Positions 3,492-40,064 of a DNA stretch of 64,000 nt are shown in pieces. Position 1 is the first letter of the stretch; each line of letters begins with the position of its first letter. The notes below the pieces were generated by a model that was not told the origin of the DNA, searched no databases, and saw nothing but the letters and a program-made list of their open reading frames with translations. A program made the translations under genes and the position numbers. Source of the stretch: Rebecca billardiae RCC1528 (taxonomy: Eukaryota; Protista; Haptophyta); assembly GCA_965240325.2 (NCBI GenBank), contig OZ251228.1, positions 2,046,001-2,110,000 on the forward strand. The letters run 5' to 3'.

Positions 3492-5741
3492 ATGGTCGAC
3501 GCGAAGTACCCCAAATGTGATCACGCCGGCTGCACCAAGCAGCCTTCGTTCGGCATGCCGGGCGACGCGCGCGCCAGCCGGTGCGCCACGCACAAGCTGG
3601 CCGGCATGGTCGACGTGGTGAGTCGCAAGTGTGATCACACCGGCTGCACCAAGTGGCCTTCGTTCGGCATGCCGGGCGACGCGCGCGCCAGCCGGTGCGC
3701 CACGCACAAGCTGGCCGGCATGGTCGACGTGGTGAGCCGCAAGTGTGATCACACCGGCTGCACCACACGGCCTAACTTTGGCATGCTGGGCGACGCGCGC
3801 GCCAGCCGGTGCGCTGCGCACAAGCTGGCCGGCATGGTCGACGTGAAGAGCTCCAAGTGTGATCACACTGGCTGCACCAAGGGGCCTTCGTACGGCATGC
3901 CGGGCGACGCGCGCGCCAGCCGGTGCGCCACGCACAAGCTGGCCGGCATGGTCGACGTGAAGAGCTCCAAGTGTGATCACACGGGCTGCACCAAGGGGCC
4001 TTCGTACGGCATGCCGGGCGACGCGCGCGCCAGCCGGTGCGCCACGCATAAGCTGGCCGGCATGGTCGACGTGAAGAGCCACAAGTGTGATCACGCCGGC
4101 TGCACCAAGCAGCCTTCGTTCGGCATGCCGGGCGACGCGCGCGCCAGCCGGTGCGCCACGCACAAGCTGGCTGGCATGGTCAACGTGGTGAGCCCCAAGT
4201 GTGATCACACCGGCTGCATCACGCGGCCTTCGTTCGGCATGCTGGGCGACGCGCGCGCCAAACGGTGCGCTACGCACAAGCTGGCCGGCATGGTCAACGT
4301 GAGGAGCTCCAAGTGTGATCACACGGGCTGCACCACGGGGCCTTCGTACGGCATGCCGGGCGACGCGCGCGCCAGCCGGTGCGCCACGCACAAGCTGGCC
4401 GGCATGGTCGACGTGAGGAGCCCCAAGTGTGATCACACCGGCTGCACCAAGGGGCCTTCGTTCTGCATGCCGGGCGACGCGCGCGCCAGCCGGTGCGCTA
4501 CGCACAAGCTGGCCGGCATGGTCGACGCGAAGAGCCACAAGTGTGATCACGCCGGCTGCACCAAGCAGCCTTCGTTCGGCATGCCGGGCGACGCACGCGC
4601 CAGCCGGTGCGCCACGCACAAGCTGGCCGGCATGGTCGACGTGAGGAGCCCCAAGTGTGATCACACCGGCTGCACCAAGGGGCCTTCGTACGGCATGCCG
4701 GGCGACGCGCGCGCCAGCCGGTGCGCCACGCACAAGCTGGCCGGCATGGTCGACGTGGTGAGCCGCAAGTGTGATCACACCGCCTGCACCAAGGGGCCTT
4801 CGTTCGGCATGCCGGGCGACGCGCGCGCCAGCCGGTGCGCCACGCACAAGCTGGCCGGCATGGTCGACGTGAAGAGCCACAAGTGTGATCACGCCGGCTG
4901 CACCACGCGGCCTTCATTTGGCATGCCGGGCGACGCGCGCGCCAGCCGGTGCGCCACGCACAAGCTGGCCGGCATGGTCGACGTGGTGAGCCGCAAGTGT
5001 GATCACACCGGCTGCACCAAGGGGCCTTCGTACGGCATGCCGGGTGACGCGCGCGCCAGCCGGTGCGCCACGCACAAGCTGGCCTGCATGGTCGACGTGA
5101 AGAGCCACAAGTGTGATCACGCCTGCTGCACCAAGCAGCCTTCGTACGGCATGCCGGGCGACGCGCGCGCCAGCCGGTGCGCCACGCATAAGCTGGCCGG
5201 CATGGTCGACGTGAAGAGCCACAAGTGTGATCACGCCTGCTGCACCAAGCAGCCTTCGTTCGGCATGCCGGGCGACGCGCGCGCCAGCCGGTGCGCTACG
5301 CACAAGCTGGCAGGCATGTTTGACAGTCGGCTCGCCGTCCCCAAGCGCAGGCTGGGGCATGGCACCGGCGACCAGGGCACGCGCGCCGCGAAGCGACAGC
5401 ACAAACCCACCAGCTGCGTTGCCGCTGTTTCGGACGCCGCGCCGCAGCTTTCCCCACCGCCGCCGCTGGTCTCTGTCAGCATCGTCCGCTGGCGCTCGCA
5501 AGATGGCACGATCTATTCGGTTGACGACGCGGTGGTCAATGATGGTGCCTGGGCCCTGGACGAGCGGCACCTGCCCGGCAACGCAGGCGACGCAGTCCGG
5601 GCTGCCCATGGAAGCTACGACCAGGGTCTACCAGCACTACCGTCACCATCGATGGCGGCGGGAGCAGCACGACGGCAGCAACCACAGGACATACCTGTGG
5701 TGATGGCCAGGAGGGTCCCGGCCCGCGACGGTGCAGGCTGA
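3492..5741 (+). CDS. EsV-1-7-type Cys/His repeat protein, copy 1 (16 x 38-aa repeats, tail type A)
   Basis: Repeat CDHxGCTxxPxFGMPGDARASRCATHKLAGMVDVxSxK (C-x4-C-x16-C-x2-H); open frame; start uncertain (ORF open from 3177). Confidence 0.8.
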   Translation: MVDAKYPKCDHAGCTKQPSFGMPGDARASRCATHKLAGMVDVVSRKCDHTGCTKWPSFGMPGDARASRCATHKLAGMVDVVSRKCDHTGCTTRPNFGMLGDARASRCAAHKLAGMVDVKSSKCDHTGCTKGPSYGMPGDARASRCATHKLAGMVDVKSSKCDHTGCTKGPSYGMPGDARASRCATHKLAGMVDVKSHKCDHAGCTKQPSFGMPGDARASRCATHKLAGMVNVVSPKCDHTGCITRPSFGMLGDARAKRCATHKLAGMVNVRSSKCDHTGCTTGPSYGMPGDARASRCATHKLAGMVDVRSPKCDHTGCTKGPSFCMPGDARASRCATHKLAGMVDAKSHKCDHAGCTKQPSFGMPGDARASRCATHKLAGMVDVRSPKCDHTGCTKGPSYGMPGDARASRCATHKLAGMVDVVSRKCDHTACTKGPSFGMPGDARASRCATHKLAGMVDVKSHKCDHAGCTTRPSFGMPGDARASRCATHKLAGMVDVVSRKCDHTGCTKGPSYGMPGDARASRCATHKLACMVDVKSHKCDHACCTKQPSYGMPGDARASRCATHKLAGMVDVKSHKCDHACCTKQPSFGMPGDARASRCATHKLAGMFDSRLAVPKRRLGHGTGDQGTRAAKRQHKPTSCVAAVSDAAPQLSPPPPLVSVSIVRWRSQDGTIYSVDDAVVNDGAWALDERHLPGNAGDAVRAAHGSYDQGLPALPSPSMAAGAARRQQPQDIPVVMARRVPARDGAG

Positions 5742-6374
5742 TGAAGCCGTGAAGCGTGGCTGGTCGTGATGATCTCCCGGCGGTCATCACGACGAGCTTT
5801 TCGTTCGAGCGAGCGCTGGCATCGGGCCGTGGATTCCGAGACGCCACCGGGCACTGCAGAAGGTTTTCACCGCGCTCGACTTCACGCCCCTGTTCCGCTC
5901 ATGTCGACCGGCGCCCCTCCACTCACGGCCGGCAAGGGCTGGCCCATCGAGCTGCTCAAGACCTTCATCGTCACTGACTCTGACAGGGACGTGCCCTGGC
6001 CGCACATCGGCACGCTCGGCAAGCAGCTGCCCTTCCCGGAGGCGTGCGCGATGGCCCAATCCGCAATCGATGGCGCAGAAGCATGGGTACGACGCTGTGC
6101 ATCTCGACGTGGACTTCCTGCTCGAGCACGGCGGCCCGACGCGGTGGTCGCGCTGCTCGCGCAGCACTGCCTCCAGCCCAGCTCACGTGCGGCTGGCACT
6201 TCGGACGTACCGTGCCACCTAGTCACAGTCGTACACCACCTCTCCGACGCCGATGACGGATGAGCGCAACTGCGCAAAGCGCTCCGCGCTTGTGAGGTTG
6301 TGCCCACTGCCGGTCCGGTGGATCCTGACCACTTGACCAGCTTTTGGCGACGAAGTTGCTGGCTACAATCTCGC

Positions 6375-11764: not shown

Positions 11765-11800
11765 ACATGCACGCGGACGACGGGTGGCCCGGGCGCCTAT

Positions 11801-11960: not shown

Positions 11961-13605
11961 TGGCCCGCGGTGCAGGGCGGAGCGCGCAGCGTGGAGCCCG
12001 CACCAGCGGGCCCGAACAACGTTTCAAAAAGATCTTTGATCAAGAAAAAAGGGACGGGGGACGATTTTCATGGCTGGAGGAGACCGAGTTTCGAATTTTG
12101 AGACCCTCTCTAACATGCATCACGGCCGAAAAAGGTCGCGCCCACGGCAAGTTCATAGTAAATAAGCGTGGAGTGACGCCCGTCCAAAAAACTTCACGCC
12201 CTTTAGGATCCCTAACGTAACGAACCGTTATAAGCGATTTTTCCGGCCAATGAGATTGCAGCAAGGTCCAAGGAGCGATGACGTATCTAGATAGAGATTG
12301 CCGCGAACCGATGTGACCATGTACGTCCCTTGAATCAGTTGAATCAACTATTCAATCGCGCCGTGTCTGTATCAGGAGCCGACGAGGCAAGGGTCAGTAG
12401 CCGATGGGCCAACCTCGGCGAATCTCAATACTATCTGACACCGGAGCGGGAGCCGGGGCGCGCGGGCCCGCGTTTTCTACGCCACGGCTGCGGCGAGACC
12501 GCGAGAGGATGAGGCGAGCTGACGAGCGACCGACGGGTGAGGACGGCGATGGGCAGGTGCGCGCGGCGAGTTGCGCCTGGAGCGCGCGGCTGCGGCGGGT
12601 CCCGACTGCCGTCGACATCGCGTTCGTGCCCCCGCTCACTCCGCGCGCCCCCGCCGCCCCGTGTCGATGCCTGCGCGCGGCCGCGCGCCGGTCGGCGCCT
12701 AGGCGCCCCGGCCGCGCCGCGGCAGCCGCCCTGTATTCGGGCGCTCGCAAGCTCGGGGGCAGCGGCGCCTGATGCCGGACTGATCGATCTCTGAGTCTTC
12801 GACTTCACCACGCGCCGCCCTTGCCATGCCTTTCCGGGGAGCGCCGACGATCCGAGTCCATCGTCGACCGGTCGACTCTGAGCGAGGGCTACGCCTCGGA
12901 ACTGAACGGTACTCTACGAGGAGGACGAGCTGCGCGGGCGACGGTGGTGCGTGACGTCCCCAGAGCTGGCTGTGCCTCTGCAACGCGTGCCGAGCCTGAT
13001 CGAGGTGTGTCAGCCCGTGCACGCGCGGCGTGCGCGAACGATCTGTGACTGGTGCCCAGTCGCACCTCCGACCTCGGCACCGTGCTCCCTCGGGCTGTCA
13101 GCTCCGCGTGGCCTGGCGTGCACGTCGAGTTGCGCTCATGCGTCGATCACGCCTCGCGCCCGCCTGTCGGCCGTCGCGCAGGCGCTGGTCGAACCCTACT
13201 CGGACCAGTGCAAATCACCTAACTATCCTGGCGCTGCCGCGGTGCGCGGTGACCCGCGGCGGGACAGCGGTCAGTCAGCAGCAGCGGCCCGAACGAATCC
13301 GCGGCCCCGCACCGTGCTCCCTGGCTGTCAGCTTCGCGTGGCCTGGCGTGCACGTGGAGTCGCGCTCATGCGTCGATCACGCCTCGTCGCATCCGCCTGT
13401 ACACAATCGGCGCCGCGCCGGCGGCTGCGAAGTGCGCCGATGGGCCCGCGCCCCGGGCGCGGCGGGCGGCGGCGCGCCGCTGGAGTCTAGTTGTACGGGC
13501 ATGCAACTCCGGGTCTGTCAATAGACGACTGCGATGGAGGGTGCACCGCCACCGCGGGCCCTGAACTACGTTCGTTCTACGGAAAAGGACCGCGGAACGC
13601 GGTCA
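11961..13605 (+). mobile_element. Non-autonomous Helitron2/Helentron-like element A
   Basis: 5' T+GGCCCGCGGTG(C) pairs with an internal IR at 12000-12012 and a subterminal IR at 13550-13560. 3' hairpin GACCGCG-GAA-CGCGGTC at 13588-13604. Inserted at A^T relative to the empty site at 26802. Confidence 0.75.
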
Positions 13606-13750: not shown

Positions 13751-15100
13751 CTAATCGTAGTCGGACGAGGCGGATGACAGATCGGATGCCATCACCGTCC
13801 AATGGTCAGACTCATCATCAGTGTCTGTGTCACCGTGTGGCGACAGTCGGCAATCCGCCCCGTTGCCGCTCTCGAGTCTCCCGACCAGCGGCGGCGGTTG
13901 GGGCAGCTGCGGGGCGGCGTCCGAGACAGTGACAAGGTGGCTGGTGGGTTTGTGCCGGCGCGTCGCTGTGCGCGTGCCCTGATCGCCAGCGCCATGCTCC
14001 AGTCTGCGCTTGGCAATGGCGAGCCGAGTGTTAACCATGCCGACCAGCTTGTGTTCAGCGCACCGGCTGGCGCGCGTGTCACCCGGCATGCCGAACGAAG
14101 GCCACTTGGTGCAGCCGGTGTGATCACACTTGCGGCTCTTCACGTCGACCATGCCGGCCAGCTTGTGCGTGGCGCACCGGCTGGCGCGCGCGTCGCCCGG
14201 CATGCCGAAGTTAGGCCGTGTGGTGCAGCCGGTGTGATCACACTTGCGGCTCTTCACGTCGGCCATGCCGGCCAGCTTGTGCGTACCGCACCGGCTGGCG
14301 CGCGCGTCGCCCGGCATGCCGAATGAAGGCCCCTTGGTGCAGCCGGTGTGATCACACTTGCGGCTCTTCACGTCGACCATGCCGCCCAGCTTGTGCGCAG
14401 CGCACCGGCTGGCGCGCGCGTCGCCCGGCATGCCGAAGTAAGGCCCCTTGGTGCAGCCGGTGTGATCACACTTGGGGCTCCTCACGTCGACCATGCCGCC
14501 CAGCTTGTGCGTACCGCACCGGCTGGCGCGCGCGTCGCCCGGCATGCCGAATGAAGGCTGCGTGGTGCAGCCGATGTGATCACACTTGCGGCTCTTCACG
14601 TGGACCATGCCGGCCAGCTTGTGCGCAGCGCACCGGCTGGCGCGCGCGTCGCCCAGCATGCCGAACGAAGGCACCTTGGTGCAGCCGGTGTGATCACACT
14701 TGGGGCTCCTCACGTCGACCATGCCGGCCAGCTTGTGCGTACCGCACCGGCTGGCGCGCGCGTCGCCCGGCATGCCGAACGAAGGCTGGTTGGTGCAGCC
14801 GGTGTGATCACACTTGCGGCTCTTCACGTCGACCATGCCGGCCAGCTTGTGCGTACCGCACCGGCTGGCGCGCGCGTCGCCCGGCATGCCGAATGATGGC
14901 CGCGTGGTGCAGCCGATGTGATCACACTTGCGGCTCTTCACGTCGACCATGCCGGCCAGCTTGTGCACAGCGCACCGGCTGGCGCGCGCGTCGCCCGGCA
15001 GCGTCACCCGGACGGGCGCGCGTGGTGCGGCGAGCTCGTCCGCCGGGCCGCGCCAGTTCACCGGATCCACGCCCGCGCGATTCCAAGATCGAGGTTTCAT
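13751..15100 (-). CDS. EsV-1-7-type repeat protein, copy 2 (8 repeats, tail type B)
   Basis: Same 38-aa repeat; start MKPRSW assumed. Confidence 0.75.
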   Translation of the reverse strand: MKPRSWNRAGVDPVNWRGPADELAAPRAPVRVTLPGDARASRCAVHKLAGMVDVKSRKCDHIGCTTRPSFGMPGDARASRCGTHKLAGMVDVKSRKCDHTGCTNQPSFGMPGDARASRCGTHKLAGMVDVRSPKCDHTGCTKVPSFGMLGDARASRCAAHKLAGMVHVKSRKCDHIGCTTQPSFGMPGDARASRCGTHKLGGMVDVRSPKCDHTGCTKGPYFGMPGDARASRCAAHKLGGMVDVKSRKCDHTGCTKGPSFGMPGDARASRCGTHKLAGMADVKSRKCDHTGCTTRPNFGMPGDARASRCATHKLAGMVDVKSRKCDHTGCTKWPSFGMPGDTRASRCAEHKLVGMVNTRLAIAKRRLEHGAGDQGTRTATRRHKPTSHLVTVSDAAPQLPQPPPLVGRLESGNGADCRLSPHGDTDTDDESDHWTVMASDLSSASSDYD

Positions 15101-15164
15101 CAGCCGCCAATGCTCATCAGCTTTCGGAGCGGAATTGCATGCCCTGCCGCATCCCTGACGCACA

Positions 15165-15830
15165 ATGGCGGGCGCGAGGAGCAACGCGACGGGGCGGTCG
15201 CGCTGAGCGCCGCGTTCGTTTCGTACAGCTCCTTCATCCTCGTGCCGGAGCACCGGCTCCTCTTCTGCAAGATCGACCAGGTCGTGAGCCAGAACTTCGT
15301 GCAGCTCTTCCGCGCGGTCCGCGCGCCGCACGACCCGGCGCTGCGCAAGCAGCTGTTCGTGCAGAACACCAACACGCTGCGCTACTTCGGGCTGGGCGTG
15401 GAGGACGGCGCGGCGCGGCTGGAGGAGCCGGCGTGGCACGCCGCCGTCGTCTACAGAGTGCCGCTCGAGCACTTCGCCTCGGCGTACGCGTCCATGTGCA
15501 CCGCGGGCCGTGACATGGACGGCGCGCGCCATTGCTCGGAGGCATTCGGCGTGTCGCGCCCCAGCTTCGACGAGGCGGCGGCAGCGCTCGGGCGAGGGCG
15601 CGTGCGCAACGGCATCAAATGCGGCAGTCTGAGCACTGCGGCGGGCTCAGCGCCACCCTCGGCGCGTACAAGACGATCGAGCGCCTCGAGCCGATGCGCG
15701 CGCGCGCGCAGCCGTCGAGCGCATGCTGCGCGCGGTCGGGGTGGACGTGCGCGCGCTGGCGCCCGAGCTGGACAAGCTGTTCCCCGACGAGCACGCGCGC
15801 GCGGCGCGGCTGCGGAGCGTCGAGCCGGGC
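15165..15830 (+). pseudogene. Frameshifted Sulfotransfer_2-like fragment (unit 1)
   Basis: ILVPEHRLLFCKI..VV, YRVPLEHFASAY, then QSEHCGGL in another frame. Confidence 0.55.
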
Positions 15831-15961
15831 GACGGCGCTCCGCGCAAGCGGCCGGCGCCGCAGCTCGCGGACGGGTGGCGGCGTGCGTGGGCAAAGCGGC
15901 GCGCGCCCGCCGCGCCGAGCGGCGCGTTGCCCTCGAGGCCGAGCGCGCGCGCGCCAAGGAG

Positions 15962-16585
15962 ATGGCGCTGCAGGCCTTCTCGACAATCTCGTACCACGGC
16001 ACGGCGTTCGGCGCGCTGCGCACGCTGTACGACGACGGCTCGCGGCCGGACGGCCGGCCGCTCGCCGTCGGCGCCTCGCCGCCGCCGCGCCGCCCTGCGG
16101 CGCGCGGCACGCCCGAGTCGGCGCACGCGCTGCCGCCCGCGCGCACGCCCAAGCGCGCCGCCGTGCCGCTGCCGACGCTCGGCCGCGTCGGGCTGGTCCC
16201 CGCGCCGGGCGGCGAGGGGTCGGAGGAGGAGGAGAGCCGCGTGCCCACGCTGGACGAGGCGCTCGCCGACTGGACGCGGGAGCAGCGGCCTGTCTTCGAC
16301 GAGCTCGTGCGCAGTGCGCGCGCCGTGTCGTGCGCGCACGGCCTCGTGCGCGCCGCCGCGCAGGCCGAGCGCTCGGCCGGCCGCGCCGAGGGCACTGCCG
16401 GGACTTGCGGCCTCGCGCGCGCTGAGGAGCTGGGCGCGAGATGCCTGGCGCGCGCTGTCGACGCGGGAGGCGTGCTCCACGCCGCGCGTCACCCGCTGCC
16501 GCTGGACGACCCGCTCGGCGTCGCCCTGGCGATGCTGCATGCCGCACTCGATGCGGAAGTGCAAGACGCGTGGCCATGGTCGTGA
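15962..16585 (+). other. Chimeric 207-aa junction ORF
   Basis: MALQAF..EEEES fused in frame to RVPTLDEAL..AWPWS (SAAL1-like C-terminus). Confidence 0.6.
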
Positions 16586-16787: not shown

Positions 16788-18796
16788 TGGCCCGCGGTGC
16801 AGGGCGGAGCGCGCAGCGTGGAGCCCGCACCAGCGGGCCCGAACCACGTTTCAAAAAGATCTTTGATCAAGAAAAAAGGGACGGGGGGGCGATTTTTAGG
16901 GCTGGCGGAGACCGAGTTTCGAGTTTTTGAGATCGCATAGAGAGGTCTATTAGGCCGAAAAAAACCGCGCCCAGCTGATTCCCTTAAGTAAAGTGCGATC
17001 CGGACGTCAGCTGGACGTGACAATGTTAGTGTAACGGTTCGTTACGAGCGCGATTTTAAGTATGAGATTGCCGCCAACCGCCAACCGATAAAAACGGCAA
17101 GGCAAGGGATCGGGAAACTTGATCACTTATTCTAACTGTGAATAGTAAAATGCTCTCCCCGAGCGCGCCTGTCGCCTCGCAGGCCGCGCGTCTCGCCCCT
17201 CGCTCCGCTCTCCCCGAGGCTGAGCTCGCGGCCCGCCTGTCACCTCGCAGGCGCGCGCCACGGACACATGCGCGACGAGATCGCGGCGGGGGCGGCGAGA
17301 TCGCGGCGGGGGCGACGGGCAACAACCTGCCCGCGGGCGCGTTCGTCACTCGAGGAGCAGCGCGCAAGGGCGAGCCGAGTCCGGAGCACGCGAGCTCGTC
17401 GCTCGCCGACCGGAGCAGAGCGCGCCGCCCGCCGCCGCCGAGCGAGCGGCGCGGCAGAGCTGATGAGCCGGATGCGCCCGGAGCTCGCGCGGCTGAAGGG
17501 CGAGCTCGAGCACGCGAGCTCGCGCCTCGACGCCGAGCCCGAGCTCCTCCTCAACTCGGTCGACGGCGGCGCGGAGGTCCGGCAGCAGCGTGAGGACTCA
17601 CAGACAGTGTGAGTGAGCCGCGCGCAGCTCAGCCTGCCGCTGGCAGCCGCCGTCTTCGAGGCCGACGCGGCGGAGGAGGCGGCGGGCGACGAGATCGCGG
17701 CGGGGGCGGCGAGATCGCGGCGGGGGCGACGGGCAACAACCTGCCCGCGGGCGCGTTCGTCACTCGAGGAGCAGCGCGCAAGGGCGAGCCGAGTCCGGAG
17801 CACGCGAGCTCGTCGCTCGCCGACCGGAGCAGAGCGCGCCGCCCGCCGCCGCCGAGCGAGCGGCGCGGCAGAGCTGATGAGCCGGATGCGCCCGGAGCTC
17901 GCGCGGCTGAAGGGCGAGCTCGAGCACGCGAGCTCGCGCCTCGACGCCGAGCCCGAGCTCCTCCTCAACTCGGTCGACGGCGGCGCGGAGGTCCGGCAGC
18001 AGCGTGAGGACTCACAGACAGTGTGAGTGAGCCGCGCGCAGCTCAGCCTGCCGCTGGCAGCCGCCGTCTTCGAGGCCGACGCGGCGGAGGAGGCGGCGGG
18101 CGAGCACGGCGGCGCGGTGGAGCAGGCGCGCACGCGAGGCGGCAGGCGCGACGCGCCGCTCGCCTCGTTCCACCGCCCCGAGCTCCGCTCGGTCGGTCTC
18201 GGTGCGCGGCTGCGCAGCCGGCAGGCCGGCGGGCCAGCAGTCTGCAGTGGCGCGCGCTCTCGCTCTGCCGGCACGAGGCGTGCCGGCTGAGCGACCAGCG
18301 GCCCGTCGTCGAGCGCATGGCGCAGGGCGAGTACCTCAAGCAGGTGCGCCCGCTCGCGCGCACGCGCCGGCTCGCGACCAGCGGCCCTTCGTCGAGCGCA
18401 TGGCGCAGCGCGAGCACCTTGCAAGCTGAAGCAGGTGCGCCCGCACGCGCGCACGCGCCGGCCCGGCGCCGCGCGGCGCCTCTCGCCCTCTCGCCCTGCG
18501 CGCGCCGCCGCCCCGCTTCCCCGCGCGGCCCGTCCGCGCCTCTCGCCCTGCGAGCGCGCCGCCCCGCTTCCCCGCGCGGCCCGTCCGCTGGTGTCCCATG
18601 CCACCCTTGATGGCCGTGCGCGCCCGCATACTCGCGCCGAGTCCGAGACTCGGTCTCGGGTCTGACTCTCCCTCTCAGAGTGGCTGAACTGTCTTTCTGA
18701 CTCGGACTGACTGACTCGTCAGTCTCATTCTCAACCACTGCGCCGCGGGCCCCCAACTGCGTTGGTTCTACGGAAAAGGACCGCGGAACGCGGTCA
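16788..18796 (+). mobile_element. Non-autonomous Helitron2/Helentron-like element B with an internal 414-bp tandem duplication (17272-18099)
   Basis: Same termini as element A (TGGCCCGCGG...GACCGCGGAACGCGGTCA), same target position, different interior. Confidence 0.75.
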
Positions 18797-18800
18797 TATA

Positions 18801-18802
<2 letters not shown>

Positions 18803-18880
<78 letters not shown>
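18803..18880. repeat. (TA)n microsatellite
   Basis: Direct reading. Confidence 0.97.
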
Positions 18881-18982: not shown

Positions 18983-20446
18983 CTAACCGTAGTCGGACGA
19001 GGCGGATGACAGATCGGATGCCATCACCGTCCAATGGTCAGACTCATCATCAGTGTCTGTGTCACCGTGTGGCGGCAGTCGGCAATCCGCCCCGTTGCTG
19101 CCCTCGAGTCTCCCGACCAGCGGCGGCGGTTGGGGCAGCTGCGGGGCGGCGTCCGAGACAGTGACAAGGTGGCTGGTGGGTTTGTGCCGGCGCGTCGCTG
19201 TGCGCGTGCCCTGATCGCCAGCGCCATGCTCCAGTCTGCGCTTGGGGATGGCGAGCCGAGTGTTAACCATGCTGACCAGCTTGTGTTCAGCGCACCGGCT
19301 GGCGCGCGTGTCACCCGGCATGCCGAACGCAGGCTGCTGGGTGCAGCCGGTGTGATCACACTTGTGGCTCTTCATGTTGACCATGCCGGCCAGCTTGTGC
19401 GCAGCGCACCGGCTGGCGCGCGCGTCGCCCGGCATGCCGAAGTTAGGCCCCTTGGTGCAGCCGGTGTGATCACACTTGGGGTGCTTCAAGTCGACCATGC
19501 CGGCCAGCTTGTGCGCAGCGCACCGGCTGGCGCGCGCGTCGCCCGGCATGCCGAAGTTAGGCCCCTTGGTGCAGCCGGTGTGATCACACTTGCGGCTCTT
19601 CACGTCGACCATGCCAGCCAGCTTGTGCGCAGCGCACCGGCTGGCGCGCGCGTCGCCCAGCATGCCGAAGTTAGGCTGCTTGGTGCAGCCGGTGTGATCA
19701 CAATTGCGGCTCTTCACGTCGACCATGCCGGCCAGCTTGTGCGCAGCGCACCGGCTGGCGCGCGCGTCGCCCGGCATGCCGAAGTTAGGCTGCTTGGTGC
19801 AGCCGGTGTGATCACACTTGGGGTACTTCAAGTCGACCATGCCGGCCAGCTTGTGCGCAGCGCACCGGCTGGCGCGCGCGTCGCCCAGCATGCCGAAGTT
19901 AGGCCCCTTGGTGCAGCCGGTGTGATCACACTTGCGGCTCTTCACGTCGACCATGCCGGCCAGCTTGTGCGCAGCGCACCGGCTGGCGCGCGCGTCGCCC
20001 AGCATGCCGAAGTTAGGCTGCTTGGTGCAGCCGGTGTGATCACACTTGCGGCTCTTCACGTCGACCATGCCGGCCAGCTTGTGCGTAGCGCACCGGCTGG
20101 CGCGCGCGTCACCCGGCATGCCGAAGTTAGGCTGCTTGGTGCAGCCGGTGTGATCACACTTGCGGCTCTTCACGTCGACCATGCCGGCCAGCTTGTGCGT
20201 AGCGCACCGGCTGGCGCGCGCGTCACCCGGCATGCCGAAGTTAGGCTGCTTGGTGCAGCCGGTGTGATCACACTTGCGGCTCTTCACGTCGACCATGCCG
20301 GCCAGCTTGTGCACAGCGCACCGGCTGGCGCGCGCGTCGCCCGGCAGCGTCACCCGGACGGGCGCGCGTGGTGCGGCGAGCTCGTCCGCCGGGCCGCGCC
20401 AGTTCACCGGATCCACGCCCGCGCGATTCCAAGATCGAGGTTTCAT
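18983..20446 (-). CDS. EsV-1-7-type repeat protein, copy 3 (9 repeats, tail type B)
   Basis: Repeats mostly KQPNF/KGPNF. Confidence 0.75.
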   Translation of the reverse strand: MKPRSWNRAGVDPVNWRGPADELAAPRAPVRVTLPGDARASRCAVHKLAGMVDVKSRKCDHTGCTKQPNFGMPGDARASRCATHKLAGMVDVKSRKCDHTGCTKQPNFGMPGDARASRCATHKLAGMVDVKSRKCDHTGCTKQPNFGMLGDARASRCAAHKLAGMVDVKSRKCDHTGCTKGPNFGMLGDARASRCAAHKLAGMVDLKYPKCDHTGCTKQPNFGMPGDARASRCAAHKLAGMVDVKSRNCDHTGCTKQPNFGMLGDARASRCAAHKLAGMVDVKSRKCDHTGCTKGPNFGMPGDARASRCAAHKLAGMVDLKHPKCDHTGCTKGPNFGMPGDARASRCAAHKLAGMVNMKSHKCDHTGCTQQPAFGMPGDTRASRCAEHKLVSMVNTRLAIPKRRLEHGAGDQGTRTATRRHKPTSHLVTVSDAAPQLPQPPPLVGRLEGSNGADCRLPPHGDTDTDDESDHWTVMASDLSSASSDYG

Positions 20447-20510
20447 CAGCCGCCAATGGTCATCAGCTTTCGGAGCGGAATTGCATGCCCTGCCGCATCC
20501 CTGACGCACA

Positions 20511-24086: not shown

Positions 24087-24201
24087 TCAACCACGCATAT
24101 ACTTGTGACGTGTACGTGACACGTCGTTAACTATGCATCGCATCAGCACTATCGTCATCAGCGCGCATCATTGCGGAACAAAATTTACTACACTAGCTAA
24201 T

Positions 24202-25104
24202 CTAATCGTAGTCGGACGAGGCGGATGACAGATCGGATGCCATCACCGTCCAATGGTCAGACTCATCGGCATCAGTGTCTGTGTCACCGTGTGGCGGCAG
24301 TCGGCAATCCGCCCCGTTGCCTCTCTCGAGTCTCCCGACCAGCGGCGGCGGTGGTTGGGGCAGCTGCGGGGCGGCGTCCGGGACAGTGACACTGAGGTGG
24401 CTGGTGGGTTTGTGCCGGCGCGTCGCTGTGCGCGTGCCCTGATCGCCAGCGCCATGCTCCAGTCTGCGCTTGGCGATGGCGAGCCGAGTGTTAACCATGC
24501 TGACCAGCTTGTGTTCAGCGCACCGGCTGGCGCGCGTGTCACCCGGCATGCCGAACGAAGGCCACTTGGTGCAGCCGGTGTGATCACACTTGTGGCTCTT
24601 CACGTCGACCATGCCGGCCAGCTTGTGCGCAGCGCACCGGCTGGCGCGCGCGTCGCCCAGCATGCCGAACGAAGGCACCTTGGTGCAGCCGGTGTGATCA
24701 CACTTGCGGCTCTTCACGTGGACCATGCCGGCCAGCTTGTGCGCAGCGCACCGGCTGGCGCGCGCGTCGCCCAGCATGCCGAACGAAGGCACCTTGGTGC
24801 AGCCGGTGTGATCACACTTGCGGCTCTGCACGTCGACCATGCCGCCCAGCTTGTGCACAGCGCACCGGCTGGCGCGCGCATCGCCCAGCATGCCGAATGA
24901 AGGCCGCGTGGTGCAGCCGATGTGATCACACTTGCGGCTCTTCACGTCGACCATGCCGGCCAGCTTGTGCACAGCGCACCGGCTGGCGCGCGCGTCGCCC
25001 GGCAGCGTCACCCGGACGGGCGCGCGTGGTGCGGCGAGCTCGTCCGCCGGGCCGCGCCAGTTCACCGGATCCACGCCCGCGCGATTCCAAGATCGAGGTT
25101 TCAT
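24202..25104 (-). CDS. EsV-1-7-type repeat protein, copy 4 (4 repeats, tail type B)
   Basis: Variable pairs TR, KV, KV, KW. Confidence 0.72.
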   Translation of the reverse strand: MKPRSWNRAGVDPVNWRGPADELAAPRAPVRVTLPGDARASRCAVHKLAGMVDVKSRKCDHIGCTTRPSFGMLGDARASRCAVHKLGGMVDVQSRKCDHTGCTKVPSFGMLGDARASRCAAHKLAGMVHVKSRKCDHTGCTKVPSFGMLGDARASRCAAHKLAGMVDVKSHKCDHTGCTKWPSFGMPGDTRASRCAEHKLVSMVNTRLAIAKRRLEHGAGDQGTRTATRRHKPTSHLSVTVPDAAPQLPQPPPPLVGRLERGNGADCRLPPHGDTDTDADESDHWTVMASDLSSASSDYD

Positions 25105-25168
25105 CAGCCGCCAATGGTCATCAGCTTTCGGAGCGGAATTGCATGCCCTGCCGCATCCCTGACGCACA

Positions 25169-25830: not shown

Positions 25831-25963
25831 GCGACGGCGCTCCGCGCAAGCGGCCGGCGCCGCAGCTCGCGGACGGGTGGCGGCGTGCGTGGGCAAAGCG
25901 GCGCGCGCCCGCCGCGCCGAGCGGCGCGTTGCCCTCGAGGCCGAGCGCGCGCGCGCATAGGAG

Positions 25964-26587: not shown

Positions 26588-26790
26588 ACATGCACGCGGA
26601 CGACGGGTGGCCCGGGCGCCTATGGGCGGTGCTCCCGATCCCGGCCCCGCTCCCGCAGGGGTGCAGGGCTGCGGGTGTCGCACTCCGTCTGGTCGGAAGG
26701 CGCGGACGCATACGAATAATAATCCGAATATGTGTCTGCTAAGGTGACAGGTGTGACACTCTGACTACTCTGAGCCCGACGCTTGCCCGT

Positions 26791-26812
26791 TGCATATAGT
26801 GATATACCATAT
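26791..26812. other. Empty target site tgcatatagtga^tataccat
   Basis: Exact join of the flanks of elements A and B. Confidence 0.9.
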
Positions 26813-26932: not shown

Positions 26933-27940
26933 CTAATCGCAGTCGGACGAGGCGGATGACAGATCGGATGCCATCACCGTCCAATGGTCAGACTCATCAT
27001 CAGTGTCTGTGTCACCGTGTGGCGGCAGTCGGCAATCCGCCCCGTTGCCTCTCTCGAGTCTCCCGACCAGCGACGGCGGTTGGGGCAGCTGCGGGGCGGC
27101 GTCCGAGACAGTGACAAGGTGGCTGGTGGGTTTGTGCCGGCGCGTCGCTGTGCGCGTGCCCTGATCGCCAGCGCCATGCTCCAGTCTGCGCTTGGGGATG
27201 GCGAGCCGAGTGTTAACCATGCTGACCAGCTTGTGTTCAGCGCACCGGCTGGCGCGCGTGTCACCCGGCATGCCGAACGAAGGCCACTTGGTGCAGCCGG
27301 TGTGATCACACTTGGGGTTCTTCACGTCGACCATGCCGGCCAGCTTGTGCGTGGCGCACCGGCTGGCGCGCGCGTCGCCCGGCATGCCGAAGTTAGGCCG
27401 TGTGGTGCAGCCGGTGTGATCACACTTGCGGCTCTTCACGTCGGCCATGCCGGCCAGCTTGTGCGTACCGCACCGGCTGGCGCGCGCGTCGCCCGGCATG
27501 CCGAATGAAGGCCCCTTGGTGCAGCCGGTGTGATCACACTTGCGGCTCTTCACGTCGACCATGCCGGCCAGCTTGTGCGCAGCGCACCGGCTGGCGCGCG
27601 CGTCGCCCGGCATGCCGAAGTAAGGCCCCTTGGTGCAGCCGGTGTGATCACACTTGGGGCTCCTCACGTCGACCATGCCGCCCAGCTTGTGCGCAGCGCA
27701 CCGGCTGGCGCGCGCGTCGCCCGGCATGCCGAATGAAGGCTGCGTGGTGCAGCCGATGTGATCACACTTGCGGCTCTTCACGTCGACCATGCCGGCCAGC
27801 TTGTGCACAGCGCACCGGCTGGCGCGCGCGTCGCCCGGCAGCGTCACCCGGACGGGCGCGCGTGGTGCGGCGAGCTCGTCCGCCGGGCCGCGCCAGTTCA
27901 CCGGATCCACGCCCGCGCGATTCCAAGATCGAGGTTTCAT
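26933..27940 (-). CDS. EsV-1-7-type repeat protein, copy 5 (5 repeats, tail type B)
   Basis: Variable pairs TQ, KG, KG, TR, KW, matching repeats 4-8 of copy 2. Confidence 0.72.
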   Translation of the reverse strand: MKPRSWNRAGVDPVNWRGPADELAAPRAPVRVTLPGDARASRCAVHKLAGMVDVKSRKCDHIGCTTQPSFGMPGDARASRCAAHKLGGMVDVRSPKCDHTGCTKGPYFGMPGDARASRCAAHKLAGMVDVKSRKCDHTGCTKGPSFGMPGDARASRCGTHKLAGMADVKSRKCDHTGCTTRPNFGMPGDARASRCATHKLAGMVDVKNPKCDHTGCTKWPSFGMPGDTRASRCAEHKLVSMVNTRLAIPKRRLEHGAGDQGTRTATRRHKPTSHLVTVSDAAPQLPQPPSLVGRLERGNGADCRLPPHGDTDTDDESDHWTVMASDLSSASSDCD

Positions 27941-28008
27941 CAGCCGCCAATGGTCATCAGCATTCTTTCGGAGCGGAATTGCATGCCCTGCCGCATCCCT
28001 GACGCACA

Positions 28009-28670
28009 ATGGCGGGCGCGAGGAGCAACGCGACGGGGCGGTCGCGCTGAGCGCCGCGTTCGTTTCGTACAGCTCCTTCATCCTCGTGCCGGAGCACCGG
28101 CTCCTCTTCTGCAAGATCGACCAGGCCGCGAGCCAGAACTTCGTGCAGCTCTTCCGCGCGGTCCGCACGCCGCACGACCCGGCGCTGCGCAAGCAGCTGT
28201 TCGTGCAGAACACCAACACGCTGCGCTACTTCGGGCTGGGCGTGGAGGACGGCGCGGTGCGGCTGGCCGAACCGGCCTGGCAGGCCGCCGTCGTCTACAG
28301 AGTGCCGCTCGAGCGCTTCGCCTCGGCGTACGCGTCCATGTGCACCGCGGGCCGTGACATGGACGGCGCGCGCCATTGCTCGGAGGCATTCGGCGTGTCG
28401 CGCCCCAGCTTCGACGAGGCGGCGGCAGCGCTCGGGCGAGGGCGCGTGCGCAACGGCATCAGATGCGGCAGTCTGAGCACTGCAGCGGGCTCAGCGCCAC
28501 CCTCGGCGCTTGCAAAACGTTCGAGCGCCTCGAGCCGACGCGCGCGCACGCAGCCGTCGAGCGTATGCTGCGCGCGGTCGGGGTGGACGTGCGCGCGCTG
28601 GCGCCCGAGCTGGACAAGCTGTTCCCCGACGAGCACGCGCGCGCGGCGCTGCTGCGAAGCGTCGAGCCGG
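28009..28670 (+). pseudogene. Frameshifted Sulfotransfer_2-like fragment (unit 4)
   Basis: Same motifs as the other units. Confidence 0.55.
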
Positions 28671-28803
28671 GCGACGGCGCTCCGCGCAAGCGGCCGGCGC
28701 CGCAGCTCGCGGACGGGTGGCGGCGTGCGTGGGCAAAGCGGCGCGCGCCCGCCGCGCCGAGCGGCGCGTTGTGCTCGAGGCCGAGCGCGCGCGCGCCAAG
28801 GAG

Positions 28804-29454
28804 ATGGCGCTGCAGGCCTTCTCGACAATCTCGTACCACGGCACGGCGTTCGGCGCGCTGCGCACGCTGTACGACGACGGCTCGCGGCCGGACGGCCGGC
28901 CGCTCGCCGTCGGCGCCTCGCCGCCGCCGCGCCGCCCCGCCGCGCGCGGCACGCCCGAGTCGGCGCACGCGCTGCCGCCCGCGCGCACGCCCAAGCGCGC
29001 CGCCGCGCCGCTGCCGACGCTCGGCCGCGTCGGGCTGATCCCCGCGCCGGGCGGCGAGGGGTCGGAGGAGGAGGAGGACCGCAGGGGCTCGAGCGAGGGC
29101 ACCGCCGAGCGCGTCTCGCGCTCGTGCGAGGCGTTCCACCGCTCGTGGGCCGCGGCGGGGAGCACGCGCTCGATCGCGCAGGCCAAGATGCACCACGCGC
29201 GCATCAACACGCGCAAGTCGACGCGCCGCCTCACCGACCGGCTCTCGCAGGCGCAGGTGGAGGCGACCGCGCTCACCGCGCCGGTGGCACAGCACGTGGT
29301 GATCCCGCTGCCGCGCGTCATGGCGGCCGAGCAGGACGAGACGGTCGAGTCCGTCGACATCGGCAAGCGCCCGGCGCTCGGCGGCCTGGGCACCGTCTCT
29401 GCGCGCACGGGCGGGGGCGCCGAGCTGGGCGTGCTCAGCGCGGCGTCCATGTAG
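28804..29454 (+). CDS. Hypothetical protein, probably a 5'-truncated gene fragment (native continuation of the array unit end)
   Basis: Coding-like codon usage; MALQAF...EEEEDRRGSS...SAASM*. Confidence 0.45.
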   Translation: MALQAFSTISYHGTAFGALRTLYDDGSRPDGRPLAVGASPPPRRPAARGTPESAHALPPARTPKRAAAPLPTLGRVGLIPAPGGEGSEEEEDRRGSSEGTAERVSRSCEAFHRSWAAAGSTRSIAQAKMHHARINTRKSTRRLTDRLSQAQVEATALTAPVAQHVVIPLPRVMAAEQDETVESVDIGKRPALGGLGTVSARTGGGAELGVLSAASM

Positions 29455-38306: not shown

Positions 38307-38492
38307 TCGAGTCAGCACGGTGGCGCTCGAGTTCTTCACGGTCCTGACCGCCCTCGTCGGGAGCCTGCGCTCGCGGAGGGCTGCCCGCCTGCCCCGGCCG
38401 GGCGGCCGCGTTTTATGATTTTCTAAAGCGCCCTGTGCGATTGGACGCTCGAGCAATTGGCTCGCGCGAGGCCCCAAGCGACGCTGGCCGGC

Positions 38493-40064
38493 ATGGTCGA
38501 CGTGAAGAGCCCCGCGGCCGAGTGTGATCACACGGGCTGCACCAAGGTGCCTTCGTTCGGCATGCCGGGTGAGACGCGCGCCAGCCGATGCGCTGCGCAC
38601 AAGCTGGGCGGAATGATCAACGTGAGGAGCCCCAAGTGTGATCACACCGGCTGCACCAAACAGCCTTCGTTTGGCAGGCCGGGCGACGCGCGCTCCAGCC
38701 GGTGCGCTACGCACAAGCTGGCCGGCATGGTCGACGTGAGGAGCCCCAAGTGTGGGCACGCGGGCTGCACCACGCGGCCTAACTTTGGCATGCTGGGCGA
38801 CGCGCGCGCCAGCCGGTGCGCTGCGCACAAGCTGGCCGGCATGGTCGACGTGGTGAGCTCCAAGTGTGATCACACCGGCTGCACCACGCGGCCTTCATTT
38901 GGCATGCCGGGCGACGCGTGCGCCAGCCGGTGCGCCACGCACAAGCTGGCCGGCATGGTCGACGTGGTGAGCCGCAAGTGTGATCACACCGGCTGCACCA
39001 AGTGGCCTTCGTACGGCATGCCGGGCGACGCGCGCGCCAGCCGGTGCGCCACGCACAAGCTGGCCGGCATGGTCGACGTGAAGCACCCCAAGTGTGATCA
39101 CACCGGCTGCACCAAGGGGCCTTCGTTCGGCATGCCGGGCGACGCGCGCGCCAGCCGGTGCGCCACGCACAAGCTGGCCGGCATGGTCGACGCGAAGAAC
39201 CCCAAATGTGATCACGCCGGCTGCACCAAGCAGCCTTCGTACGGCATGCCGGGCGACGCGTGCGCCAGCCGGTGCGCCACGCACACGCTGGCCGGCATGG
39301 TCAACGTGGTGAGCCCCAAGTGTGATCACACCGGCTGCACCACACGGCCTTCGTTCGGCATGCCGGGCGACGCGCGCGCCAGCCGGTGCGCCACGCACAA
39401 GCTGGCCGGCATGGTCGACGTGGTGAGTCGCAAGTGTGATCACACCGGCTGCACCAAGTGGCCTTCGTTCGGCATGCCGGGCGACGCGCGCGCCAGCCGG
39501 TGCGCCACGCACAAGCTGGCCGGCATGGTCGACGTGGAGAGCCACAAGTGTGATCACGCCGGCTGCACCAAGCAGCCTTCGTTCCGCATGCCGGGCGACG
39601 CGTGCGCCAGCCGGTGCGCTACGCACAAGCTGGCAGGCATGTTTGACAGTCGGCTCGCCGTCCCCAAGCGCAGGCTGGGGCATGGCACCGGCGACCAGGG
39701 CACGCGCGCCGCGAAGCGACAGCACAAACCCACCAGCTGCGTTGCCGCTGTTTCGGACGCCGCGCCGCAGCTTTCCCCACCGCCGCCGCTGGTCGCTGTC
39801 AGCATCGTCCGCTGGCGCTCGCAAGATGGCACGATCTATTCGGTTGACGACGCGGTGGTCAATGATGGTGCCTGGGCCCTGGACGAGCGGCACCTGCCCG
39901 GCAACGCAGGCGACGCAGTCCGGGCTGCCCATGGAAGCTACGACCAGGGTCTACCAGCACTACCGTCACCATCGATGGCGGCAGGAGCAGCACGACGGCA
40001 GCAACCACAGGACATACCTGTGGTGATGGCCAGGAGGGTCCCGGTCCGCGACGGTGCAGGCTGA
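38493..40064 (+). CDS. EsV-1-7-type repeat protein, copy 6 (10 repeats, tail type A)
   Basis: Tail nearly identical to copy 1; 3' flank to ~40480 is homologous to 5741-6290. Confidence 0.78.
   Translation: MVDVKSPAAECDHTGCTKVPSFGMPGETRASRCAAHKLGGMINVRSPKCDHTGCTKQPSFGRPGDARSSRCATHKLAGMVDVRSPKCGHAGCTTRPNFGMLGDARASRCAAHKLAGMVDVVSSKCDHTGCTTRPSFGMPGDACASRCATHKLAGMVDVVSRKCDHTGCTKWPSYGMPGDARASRCATHKLAGMVDVKHPKCDHTGCTKGPSFGMPGDARASRCATHKLAGMVDAKNPKCDHAGCTKQPSYGMPGDACASRCATHTLAGMVNVVSPKCDHTGCTTRPSFGMPGDARASRCATHKLAGMVDVVSRKCDHTGCTKWPSFGMPGDARASRCATHKLAGMVDVESHKCDHAGCTKQPSFRMPGDACASRCATHKLAGMFDSRLAVPKRRLGHGTGDQGTRAAKRQHKPTSCVAAVSDAAPQLSPPPPLVAVSIVRWRSQDGTIYSVDDAVVNDGAWALDERHLPGNAGDAVRAAHGSYDQGLPALPSPSMAAGAARRQQPQDIPVVMARRVPVRDGAG

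What the first reader, a model, noticed from the sequence alone, without database searches (positions are those of the whole stretch)
3492..40064. Six EsV-1-7 repeat arrays with a hypervariable di-residue: candidate programmable (PRDM9/TALE-like) binding proteins
Seen: the 114-bp units are almost identical, even at synonymous sites. Variation clusters at the pair after GCT (KQ/KW/KG/KV/TR/TG/TQ/NQ/QQ), the next P[S/N/Y/A][F/Y], and the linker V[K/V/R]S[R/H/P/S]K. Each copy has its own string. Copy 1: KQ,KW,TR,KG,KG,KQ,TR,TG,KG,KQ,KG,KG,TR,KG,KQ,KQ. Copy 2: TR,NQ,KV,TQ,KG,KG,TR,KW. Copy 3: KQ,KQ,KQ,KG,KQ,KQ,KG,KG,QQ. Copy 4: TR,KV,KV,KW. Copy 5: TQ,KG,KG,TR,KW. Copy 6: KV,KQ,TR,TR,KW,KG,KQ,TR,KW,KQ. 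All stay in frame and end in a KRR-x-basic tail resembling a bipartite NLS. Established: EsV-1-7 repeats occur in algal viruses and Ectocarpus IMM, and PRDM9 and TALEs encode specificity in a few variable residues of homogenised repeats. Inference: these are rapidly re-coded modular nucleic-acid (or ligand) recognisers, possibly for TE or virus defence.
Basis: partly seen in the sequence, partly recalled or inferred. Interest (0 to 1): 0.9.

Follow-up and report, generated by a model that had tools for sequence, protein, structure and literature searches.

The report
Clustered EsV-1-7 zinc-repeat genes, variable positions
Six neighbouring genes in a GC-rich, probably algal genome each encode 4 to 16 near-identical 38-residue zinc-finger-like EsV-1-7 repeats that differ mainly at a few fixed positions, which fits a modular binding protein, but neither positive selection nor any binding target is shown.

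Summary
All match Pfam EsV_1_7_cys (E 1e-61 to 5e-222).

Three corrections:
- Synonymous sites are not unusually conserved (piS 0.094, piN 0.095).
- The "di-residue" is one hypervariable residue (9) with a coupled K/T at 8.
- The linker hot spots are residues 35 and 37.

The scaffold is constrained. All 208 zinc ligands are kept, there are no indels in 5.9 kb, and omega is about 0.17 for 64% of codons.

A site model gives omega about 4 at codons 9, 35 and 37, nominal p 1e-5. My simulations of neutral evolution with free recombination reach a comparable signal (empirical p about 0.05). The data do recombine almost freely. Positive selection is therefore suggestive, not established.

Independent homogenised arrays in giant-virus and algal relatives vary at the same positions.

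Supporting a nuclear polyanion binder, by inference only: net charge +3.2 per unit, a strict 38-residue period, an NLS-like segment and an acidic tail. No RNA data, solved structure or known fold was found.

First readers of this scan flagged similar arrays 38 times across this genome, this window's own among them; none has been followed up.

The parts
3492..5741 (+). Gene c1 (type A). First in-frame ATG at 3492; the ORF opens at 3177. Sixteen full EsV-1-7 units at 3516-5321, preceded by a half unit. A 139-aa tail follows, with the NLS-like segment KRRLGHGTGDQGTRAAKRQHK at 5343-5405.
   Evidence: (E 5e-222)
13751..15100 (-). Gene c2 (type B). Candidate ATG at 15100 (MKPRSWNRAG...). A half unit, then 8 full units at 14033-14926. 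A 93-aa tail follows: NLS-like at 13949-14011, then an acidic end (net -10 in the last 40 aa).
   Evidence: (E 4.5e-115)
18983..20446 (-). Gene c3 (type B). Nine full units at 19265-20272, all with N at residue 11, which shows homogenisation within this array. NLS-like segment at 19181-19243.
   Evidence: (E 3e-128)
24202..25104 (-). Gene c4 (type B). Four full units at 24493-24930. The tail carries three separate in-frame 3-nt insertions relative to c2, c3 and c5. NLS-like segment at 24409-24471.
   Evidence: (E 9e-61)
26933..27940 (-). Gene c5 (type B). Five full units at 27215-27766. They are positional homologues of units 4-8 of c2 (7 nt differences in 570). NLS-like segment at 27131-27193.
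   Evidence: (E 1e-75)
38493..40064 (+). Gene c6 (type A). Ten full units at 38523-39644. The 5' end is degenerate, with a 2-residue insertion in the first linker. It has the most deviations at conserved positions (1.0 per unit), so it may be decaying. The tail differs from that of c1 by 3 nt in 450.
   Evidence: (E 1e-138)
14918..16585 (+). A + strand ORF lying head-to-head with c2. Third-codon-position GC reaches 0.98. Its first exon-like part resembles the sulfotransferase 2 family. Paralogous copies lie upstream of c3, c4 and c5 within the segmental duplication of about 5 kb (about 20346-22123, 25004-26798, 27840-29076).
   Evidence: Atlas score 0.94, a lead only; no Pfam hit

Best explanation

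Organisation. There are two types. Type A is c1 and c6. Type B is c2 to c5, which lie in a tandem segmental duplication of about 5 kb, each paired with a sulfotransferase-like ORF.

Function and constraint. Most copies are functional, because the scaffold and the C-terminal tail are under purifying selection.

How the arrays change. Whole units are gained and lost by unequal crossing-over. Variants are also exchanged over very short tracts, so they assort almost independently.

Where diversity sits. Amino-acid diversity is concentrated at residue 9 (with a coupled residue 8), residue 11, residue 25 and linker residues 35 to 37. These positions evolve at least neutrally and probably under selection that favours diversity.

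Inferred mechanism. These residues alternate with conserved core residues (P10, F12, V34). They therefore most likely lie on an exposed stripe that contacts a ligand, one unit after another, along a regular rod. Given +3 net charge per unit, a fixed 38-residue period, an NLS-like segment and an acidic tail, the most likely ligand is nuclear DNA or RNA. Each array string would then set its own preference.

Shown: family membership, constraint, position-specific diversity and unit shuffling. Inferred: exposure, zinc binding, nuclear location and nucleic-acid binding.
For: Family: Pfam EsV_1_7_cys at E 1e-61 to 5e-222.

Constraint:
- 52 of 52 units keep all four ligands plus H3, P10, G16, R22, L28 and M31.
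- There are 0% indels in the arrays, whereas the flank after the c1/c6 stop codons shows 18 gaps in 769 bp.
- Site model M2a puts 64% of codons at omega 0.17.
- The c1 and c6 tails differ by 3 nt in 450.
- The c4 tail has only in-frame insertions.

Diversity:
- piN/piS is 3.6 at codons 4, 8, 9, 11, 25, 35 and 37, against 0.44 elsewhere.
- M2a gives omega of about 4 with P above 0.95 at codons 9, 35 and 37.
- Parsimony steps at nt1/nt2/nt3 are 8/10/0, 4/7/0 and 3/12/0 at codons 9, 35 and 37. No synonymous third position has more than 5.

Family-wide pattern:
- Residue 9 is the most variable position within arrays across 44 relatives (0.78), followed by 11, 36 and 35.
- Independent homogenised arrays (P0045, P0042, P0025, P0097) show three or more states at residue 9 and at 35/36.

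Regular structure:
- The period is 38 aa in 315 of 383 listed unit spacings in relatives.
- The AlphaFold model has pLDDT 81.
- All 152 residues superpose on an ESM model of a chlorophyte relative at TM 0.78 and rmsd 2.8 A.

Charge: +3.2 per unit here and +2.4 in relatives. The type B tail is +6, then -10.

Shuffling:
- c5 equals units 4-8 of c2.
- c4 shares units 1, 3 and 8 of c2.
- Linkage decays to background within 10 nt.

Fusion lead: one viral Atlas cluster combines a GIY-YIG nuclease domain with EsV-1-7 (automatic annotation).
Against: - Positive selection is not secure. Under a neutral null with free recombination, 20 of 36 simulated data sets exceed the nominal 5% LRT threshold, and one exceeds the observed 29.0.
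- Between positional homologues the N:S count is 13:4, which is about neutral, and no change falls on residue 9.
- No RNA run was listed, so expression is unknown.
- Start codons and any introns are unresolved.
- The model has pTM 0.40 and matches no solved fold.
- No nucleic-acid-binding domain or homologue of known function was found.
- In the papers searched, the only genetically studied member (Ectocarpus IMM) has no reported biochemical activity.
- c6 shows signs of decay.
Confidence: 0.45

Rival explanations
1. The proteins are functional zinc-repeat scaffolds, but the variable positions are simply unconstrained surface or loop residues. Old neutral variants are shuffled among units by gene conversion. 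There is no recognition code and no selection for diversity.
For: - A neutral null with recombination often reproduces the positive-selection signal: LRT up to 32, omega2 of 3-5, and several 'selected' sites.
- Linkage is almost absent beyond 3 nt.
- The N:S ratio is about neutral between positional homologues.
- The most polymorphic synonymous site (codon 24, per-codon piS 0.48) is about as diverse as residue 9 (piN 0.50).
Against: - The observed LRT (29.0) lies in the top 5% or so of the null.
- All six hot nucleotide sites are tri-allelic at appreciable frequency, while the third positions of the same codons are invariant.
- The same positions are the most variable in independent homogenised arrays of distant relatives.
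- Residue 37 is conserved K in relatives but hypervariable here.
Confidence: 0.25
2. The arrays are modular binders of proteins or another ligand, not nucleic acid. One possibility is binding to giant-virus or host proteins in a host-virus conflict. The variable residues would tune protein-protein recognition, as in LRR or ankyrin repertoires.
For: - The closest database relatives sit on giant-virus-like contigs.
- There are weak sub-threshold matches to the SP-RING/MIZ finger, a protein-interaction finger.
- No DNA-binding homology was found.
- The family expands in tandem clusters, as conflict genes do.
Against: - A strict period with a conserved linker and a uniformly positive unit charge fit a periodic polyanion better than varied protein surfaces.
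- The type B tail has an NLS-like segment and an acidic end.
- One viral cluster fuses the motif to a GIY-YIG nuclease.
Confidence: 0.2
3. The arrays are untranscribed or decaying remnants: coding minisatellites left by a past amplification or an ancient viral insertion. Open frames would persist only because a GC-rich repeat has few stop codons.
For: - No RNA run was listed.
- Other frames of the arrays are also open.
- c6 has a degenerate 5' end and the most deviations at conserved positions.
- Start codons are uncertain.
- Mobile-element-like insertions lie between the copies.
Against: - There is not one indel in 5.9 kb of array, although the flanks have many.
- All 208 ligand codons are intact.
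- 64% of codons have omega 0.17.
- The tails are conserved well beyond the flanks and have only in-frame indels.
- Third-position GC of 0.88 in the Pfam frame matches the host genes.
Confidence: 0.07

Closest known systems
EsV-1-7 repeat proteins (Pfam PF19114): Ectocarpus virus EsV-1 gene 7, Ectocarpus IMMEDIATE UPRIGHT, and the large brown-algal and giant-virus families
   Same: - Same motif, C-x4-C-x16-C-x2-H.
- Same 38-residue period.
- Repeat-only proteins.
- Genes clustered in tandem.
- The closest relatives (47-60% identity) lie on giant-virus-like contigs.
   Different: - The units here are far more homogenised: 83% identity against 61% within arrays of relatives.
- Arrays reach 16 units.
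- Linker residue 37 is hypervariable here but conserved K elsewhere.
- The papers found describe no variable-position pattern and no biochemical function.
PRDM9 and KRAB-type C2H2 zinc-finger arrays
   Same: - Coding minisatellite of zinc-binding units.
- A conserved scaffold with a few highly variable residues.
- Arrays change by unequal recombination.
- Paralogues lie in tandem clusters.
   Different: - Different ligand spacing, and no helix predicted.
- No PR/SET or KRAB domain.
- Positive selection is not established here.
- DNA binding is unknown.
TAL effectors (Xanthomonas)
   Same: - Near-identical tandem repeats with variation focused at one or two residues.
- A small set of recurring states: KQ, KG, TR, KW, KV.
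- A C-terminal NLS-like segment followed by an acidic end in type B.
   Different: - No sequence or fold relation.
- Zinc-type Cys/His units of 38 aa, not 34-aa helical hairpins.
- Several further variable positions.
- A eukaryotic host gene family, not a secreted effector.
- No base code is known.
WRKY19-type zinc finger (Pfam PF24906)
   Same: - A viral relative (P0001) passes both PF19114 and PF24906 (35.9 bits against a cut-off of 27).
- Atlas structure and feature searches place WRKY19-finger clusters next to EsV-1-7 clusters.
- The best Swiss-Prot fold hit, though not significant, is Arabidopsis WRKY19 residues 118-281.
   Different: - The window's proteins do not reach PF24906, even at E up to 10.
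- The function of that finger is also undescribed in what I could read.

Membership tests
EsV-1-7 cysteine-rich repeat family (PF19114) | Motif C-x4-C-x16-C-x2-H in every unit | tested here: met
   52 of 52 units carry it, with invariant ligand residues.
EsV-1-7 cysteine-rich repeat family (PF19114) | Profile HMM score above Pfam's gathering cut-off (25 bits) | tested here: met
   202 to 718 bits for the six ORFs.
EsV-1-7 cysteine-rich repeat family (PF19114) | Tandem units with a 38-residue period | tested here: met
   The period is 114 bp in all six arrays. The same period accounts for 315 of 383 listed unit spacings in relatives.
EsV-1-7 cysteine-rich repeat family (PF19114) | Zinc coordination by the Cys3His set | not testable with these tools
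   [quoted passage not shown] The structure tool returns no coordinates.
TAL effector repeats | Helical repeats of 33-35 residues with a variable di-residue at positions 12/13 | tested here: not met
   The units are 38-residue Cys/His units. The model shows only short strands and one 3-residue helix. There is no TAL Pfam match.
TAL effector repeats | One repeat reads one base | not testable with these tools
   This needs binding experiments.
PRDM9 / C2H2 zinc-finger arrays | C-x2-4-C-x12-H-x3-5-H beta-beta-alpha fingers with a PR/SET (and KRAB) domain | tested here: not met
   The ligand spacing differs. Pfam finds no zf-C2H2, SET or KRAB.
PRDM9 / C2H2 zinc-finger arrays | Positive selection at the ligand-contacting residues of a homogenised array | tested here: inconclusive
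   The LRT is 22.8 to 29.0, with omega of about 4 at codons 9, 35 and 37. A neutral null with free recombination gives an empirical p of about 0.05, and the data show almost no linkage.
SP-RING / MIZ zinc finger (PF02891) | Profile score above the gathering cut-off (33.5 bits) | tested here: not met
   17.7 to 32.4 bits, made of partial matches to profile positions 4-28.
WRKY19 zinc finger (PF24906) | Profile score above the gathering cut-off (27 bits) | tested here: not met
   It is not listed for the c4 protein even at E up to 10. The viral relative P0001 scores 35.9 bits.

The most novel reading that the evidence does not exclude
EsV-1-7 arrays may be a previously unrecognised class of natural modular nucleic-acid readers. 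Each 38-residue zinc unit would contact a fixed step of DNA or RNA. Residue 9, helped by residues 8, 11 and 25 and the preceding linker residues 35-37, would set the preference. Host and giant-virus arrays would be re-coded by unit shuffling in an arms race. This would explain the family's expansion in brown algae, other algae and giant viruses, and would give the developmental regulator IMM a biochemical mechanism.
Probability: 0.15. Interest if true: 0.85.

Novelty: new variant of a known kind. Interest (0 to 1): 0.5.

Why it matters
In the papers I could search, the EsV-1-7 domain has no reported biochemical function. Yet it forms the largest orthogroup found across brown-algal genomes, includes a developmental regulator, and is common in giant viruses.

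Diversity falls on the same few residues in highly homogenised arrays here and in independent arrays elsewhere. That names concrete candidate specificity residues (9, 11, 35-37) to test. It also supplies natural allelic series (six arrays in this window and many more in the genome) for binding assays.

If the residues do set specificity, this would be a new programmable binder scaffold and a new example of conflict-driven zinc-finger evolution outside animals. If not, it remains a clear case of concerted evolution with very short conversion tracts.

Tried and rejected
1. Expression. No RNA run was listed for the arrays (earlier attempts failed because the machine was busy). The single run found (X1, kind unknown) gave only short, low-depth contigs with no joints.

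2. Gene models. The exact-sequence look-ups I tried (c4, from either ATG) found nothing. Start codons remain unresolved.

3. The long N-terminal ORF extensions of c2-c4 are rejected as coding. They are the antisense of a + strand gene with third-position GC of 0.98.

4. Known fold. None was found:
- PDB sequence-profile search: nothing.
- Foldseek against PDB and Swiss-Prot: nothing with E below 0.5.
- Wide VIA search: best Z 2.1.

5. The nominal positive-selection result (p 1e-5) is rejected as it stands, after my recombination simulations (the first attempt timed out).

6. Recent giant-virus insertion is rejected. GC is uniform at 60-80% across the window, the arrays' third-position GC matches host genes, and cellular genes flank them (kinase, cyclin, GYF, methyltransferase).

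7. Fusion partners. Ten long relatives have no second real domain. A tblastn search of phage genomes for the GIY-YIG fusion found nothing.

8. Organism. A cyclin search returned no named close relative, and the Atlas kinase look-up was uninformative. The organism stays unidentified.

The single-protein scan found five giant-virus contigs.

10. Macaisne et al. 2017 is not held in the library.

Full report
**What is there**

Tandem Repeats Finder reports six arrays of a 114-bp unit: 3468-5318, 14034-15000, 19266-20346, 24494-25004, 27216-27840 and 38483-39641. They have 89-95% matches and no indels.

In the frame that matches Pfam they encode 16, 8, 9, 4, 5 and 10 complete 38-residue units. A six-frame scan finds no other unit in the window.

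All six ORFs match Pfam EsV_1_7_cys with E from 1e-61 to 5e-222. Matches to the MIZ finger and DUF4322 are essentially sub-threshold (one DUF4322 score, 27.6 bits on c3, just clears its 27-bit cut-off) and no matched stretch passes on its own in the six-ORF scan.

The window is a GC-rich eukaryotic chromosome segment (60-80% GC). It carries ordinary cellular genes: kinase plus LRR, cyclin, GYF, methyltransferase and histidine phosphatase. The arrays share the host's codon style, with third-position GC of 0.88. They are therefore host genes, not a fresh viral insertion. I could not name the organism.

**Organisation**

There are two gene types.
- Type A is c1 and c6, on the + strand. They share a 139-residue tail.
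- Type B is c2 to c5, on the - strand. They share a 40-residue leader from a candidate ATG (MKPRSWNRAG...), a half unit, the array and a 93-96-residue tail.

Type B lies in a tandem segmental duplication of about 5 kb whose flanks are 95.6-96.6% identical.

Each type B gene lies head-to-head with a + strand ORF that has third-position GC up to 0.98. Its first part resembles sulfotransferase family 2 (a lead only, with no Pfam hit). The long 'MARAVHV...' extensions of the mechanical ORFs are the antisense of that gene. Different insertions separate the duplication units (earlier notes s1-341037 and s1-341217).

Start codons and possible introns remain open, because no RNA run was listed. The one run found gave only fragmentary contigs.

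**Are the genes constrained?**

Yes.
- All 208 zinc-ligand residues are intact, and H3, P10, G16, R22, L28 and M31 are invariant.
- There is no indel in 5.9 kb of array. By contrast, the c1/c6 alignment that starts just inside the arrays and runs downstream has 18 gaps in 769 bp; since the coding tails line up codon for codon, the gaps lie past the stop codons.
- The coding tails of c1 and c6 differ by 3 nt in 450. Their arrays differ by 8.3% in the best register.
- The c4 tail has three insertions, all of 3 nt.
- My codon site model puts 64% of codons at omega 0.17.
- c6 has a degenerate first linker and the most deviations at conserved positions, so it may be decaying.

**Where is the variation, and is it selected?**

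Entropy peaks at residue 9 (Q, G, R, W, V) and residue 37 (R, P, H, A, S). Residues 35, 25, 11, 36, 8 and 4 follow.

Synonymous diversity is not low: piS is 0.094 and piN is 0.095. The seven hot codons have piN/piS of 3.6, and the rest have 0.44.

On a maximum-likelihood tree of the 52 units, M2a beats M1a. The LRT is 22.8 with the IQ-TREE tree and 29.0 with the FastTree tree. Omega is about 4, and posterior support falls on codons 9 and 37, plus 35 with the second tree. In those three codons the first two nucleotide positions need 44 parsimony steps and the third positions none. No synonymous third position needs more than 5.

The units are mosaics, however. Linkage falls to background within 10 nt, and 65-88% of site pairs show all four gametes.

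I therefore simulated 36 data sets with no positive selection (73% of codons at omega 0.155 and 27% at omega 1, matched to piS) and free recombination between codons. I ran them through the same pipeline. Twenty exceeded the nominal 5% threshold. Fitted omega2 was typically 3-5, with up to 11 'selected' sites. The largest LRTs were 32.3 and 28.5, against the observed 29.0. The empirical p is about 0.05.

Between clear positional homologues (c2 against c5, c2 against c4) the N:S count is 13:4, which is about neutral. No change falls on residue 9.

My reading: the hot positions evolve at least neutrally and perhaps faster. Positive selection is suggestive, not shown.

**How arrays change**

c5 equals units 4-8 of c2, with 7 differences in 570 nt. 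c4 shares units 1, 3 and 8 of c2. Since the duplication, arrays have changed mainly by gain and loss of whole units.

Array c3 has N at residue 11 in all nine units, yet it varies at residue 9. Homogenisation inside an array therefore spares residue 9.

**The wider family**

A search of 5.8 billion proteins found 367 relatives at 33-60% identity and none closer. The named ones come from Ectocarpus, Sphacelaria, Coccomyxa and the dinoflagellate Effrenium.

The two closest that I inspected sit on dense contigs with ribonucleotide reductase, topoisomerase II and RNase III. That is typical of giant viruses. Giant-virus MAGs and many Nucleocytoviricota clusters hold the family.

Across 44 relatives with four or more complete units, residue 9 is the most variable position within arrays (0.78), followed by 11, 36 and 35. 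The profile correlates with the window's profile (Spearman rho 0.65). KQ and TR are also the commonest pairs family-wide.

The most homogenised foreign arrays (79-89% unit identity) again show three or more states at residue 9 and at 35/36. The position-specific pattern is thus a property of the family. It is sharpened here by stronger homogenisation (83% unit identity against 61%).

**Structure and likely mechanism**

A four-unit AlphaFold model built on 89 aligned fragments has pLDDT 81 and pTM 0.40. Each unit shows three very short strands, at residues 12-13, 22 and 32-33, and the model has only one 3-residue helix.

It matches no solved or Swiss-Prot fold. It does superpose over all 152 residues on ESM models of relatives (TM 0.78, rmsd 2.8 A). 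This suggests a regular arrangement between units.

Residues 9 and 11 alternate with conserved P10 and F12. Residues 35 and 37 flank conserved V34. This alternation fits outward-facing positions on extended segments.

Units carry +3.2 net charge here and +2.4 in relatives. The type B tail has a basic KRR...RRHK segment, then 40 residues of net charge -10.

A fixed period, a conserved linker, uniform positive charge, an NLS-like segment and an acidic end point to a nuclear protein that lies along a periodic polyanion. One viral Atlas cluster that joins a GIY-YIG nuclease domain to the motif points the same way. All of this is inference.

**What is known**

The papers I could search describe EsV-1-7 in four ways:
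- It is possibly a new zinc finger.
- It is hugely expanded in tandem clusters in brown algae.
- It is virus-associated.
- It is present in the developmental regulator IMM.

They report no biochemical function and do not mention variable positions.

A viral relative also passes Pfam's WRKY19-finger model. This links the family to a land-plant finger, although the literature says the family is absent from land plants.

**Verdict**

Family membership is certain. The resemblance to TALEs and PRDM9 is one of evolutionary style only, not homology. The programmable-binder reading is plausible but untested.

First readers of this scan flagged similar arrays 38 times across this genome, this window's own among them. 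None has been followed up.

Noticed in passing
window 14918-16585 (+), with paralogous copies at about 20346-22123, 25004-26798 and 27840-29076: Each type B repeat gene lies head-to-head with a + strand ORF whose third-position GC reaches 0.98. The first part of that ORF resembles sulfotransferase family 2 (Atlas score 0.94, no Pfam hit). The coding signal changes frame around 15600-15900, which suggests an intron or a frameshift. The candidate start codons of the two genes are about 10 nt apart.
   Followed up: partly
window 11961-13605, 16932-18857 and 22123-24111: Different insertions occupy the same junction between the segmental-duplication units. One holds a perfect 414-bp tandem duplication (17272-18103) and an (AT)39 tract (18803-18880). 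An identical-length (AT)39 tract lies at 1533-1610. Parts of the second and third insertions match each other in inverted orientation at 83%. Earlier notes call these Helitron-like.
   Followed up: no
window, all 52 units: Variants assort almost independently. Mean r2 falls to about 0.05 within 4-9 nt, and 65-88% of site pairs show all four gametes. This implies very short conversion tracts or recurrent mutation inside a 114-bp unit.
   Followed up: yes
P0001 on L002:10001-11755 (giant-virus-like metagenome contig): This EsV-1-7 protein also passes Pfam's WRKY19 zinc-finger model (35.9 bits against a cut-off of 27). Atlas searches place WRKY19-finger clusters, from plants and giant viruses, next to EsV-1-7 clusters. 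The literature states that the family is absent from land plants.
   Followed up: partly
ESM Atlas cluster, row 9: A 52-member viral cluster of proteins of about 231 aa carries a GIY-YIG nuclease domain (98% of members) together with the EsV-1-7 motif (88%). This hints at a DNA-targeting role for the motif. A tblastn search of phage genomes did not recover it.
   Followed up: partly
window 38457-40064 (c6): c6 has a 2-residue insertion in its first linker and no homology with c1 upstream of the array. It carries three R19C changes and other singletons at conserved positions (1.0 per unit, against 0.2-0.6 in the other arrays). It may be a decaying copy.
   Followed up: partly
window 42721-44262 and 45180-46736: A direct repeat of about 1.55 kb at 93.5% identity flanks a (CT)n-rich tract at 44808-45078.
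   Followed up: no
window 50032-52542 (-) and 57077-61390 (+): One ORF has five GYF domains plus a GYF_2 domain. Another is a 1437-aa ORF with a protein kinase domain and a weak, sub-stretch match to a leucine-rich repeat model (LRR_6). Both are ordinary host genes, useful as context.
   Followed up: no
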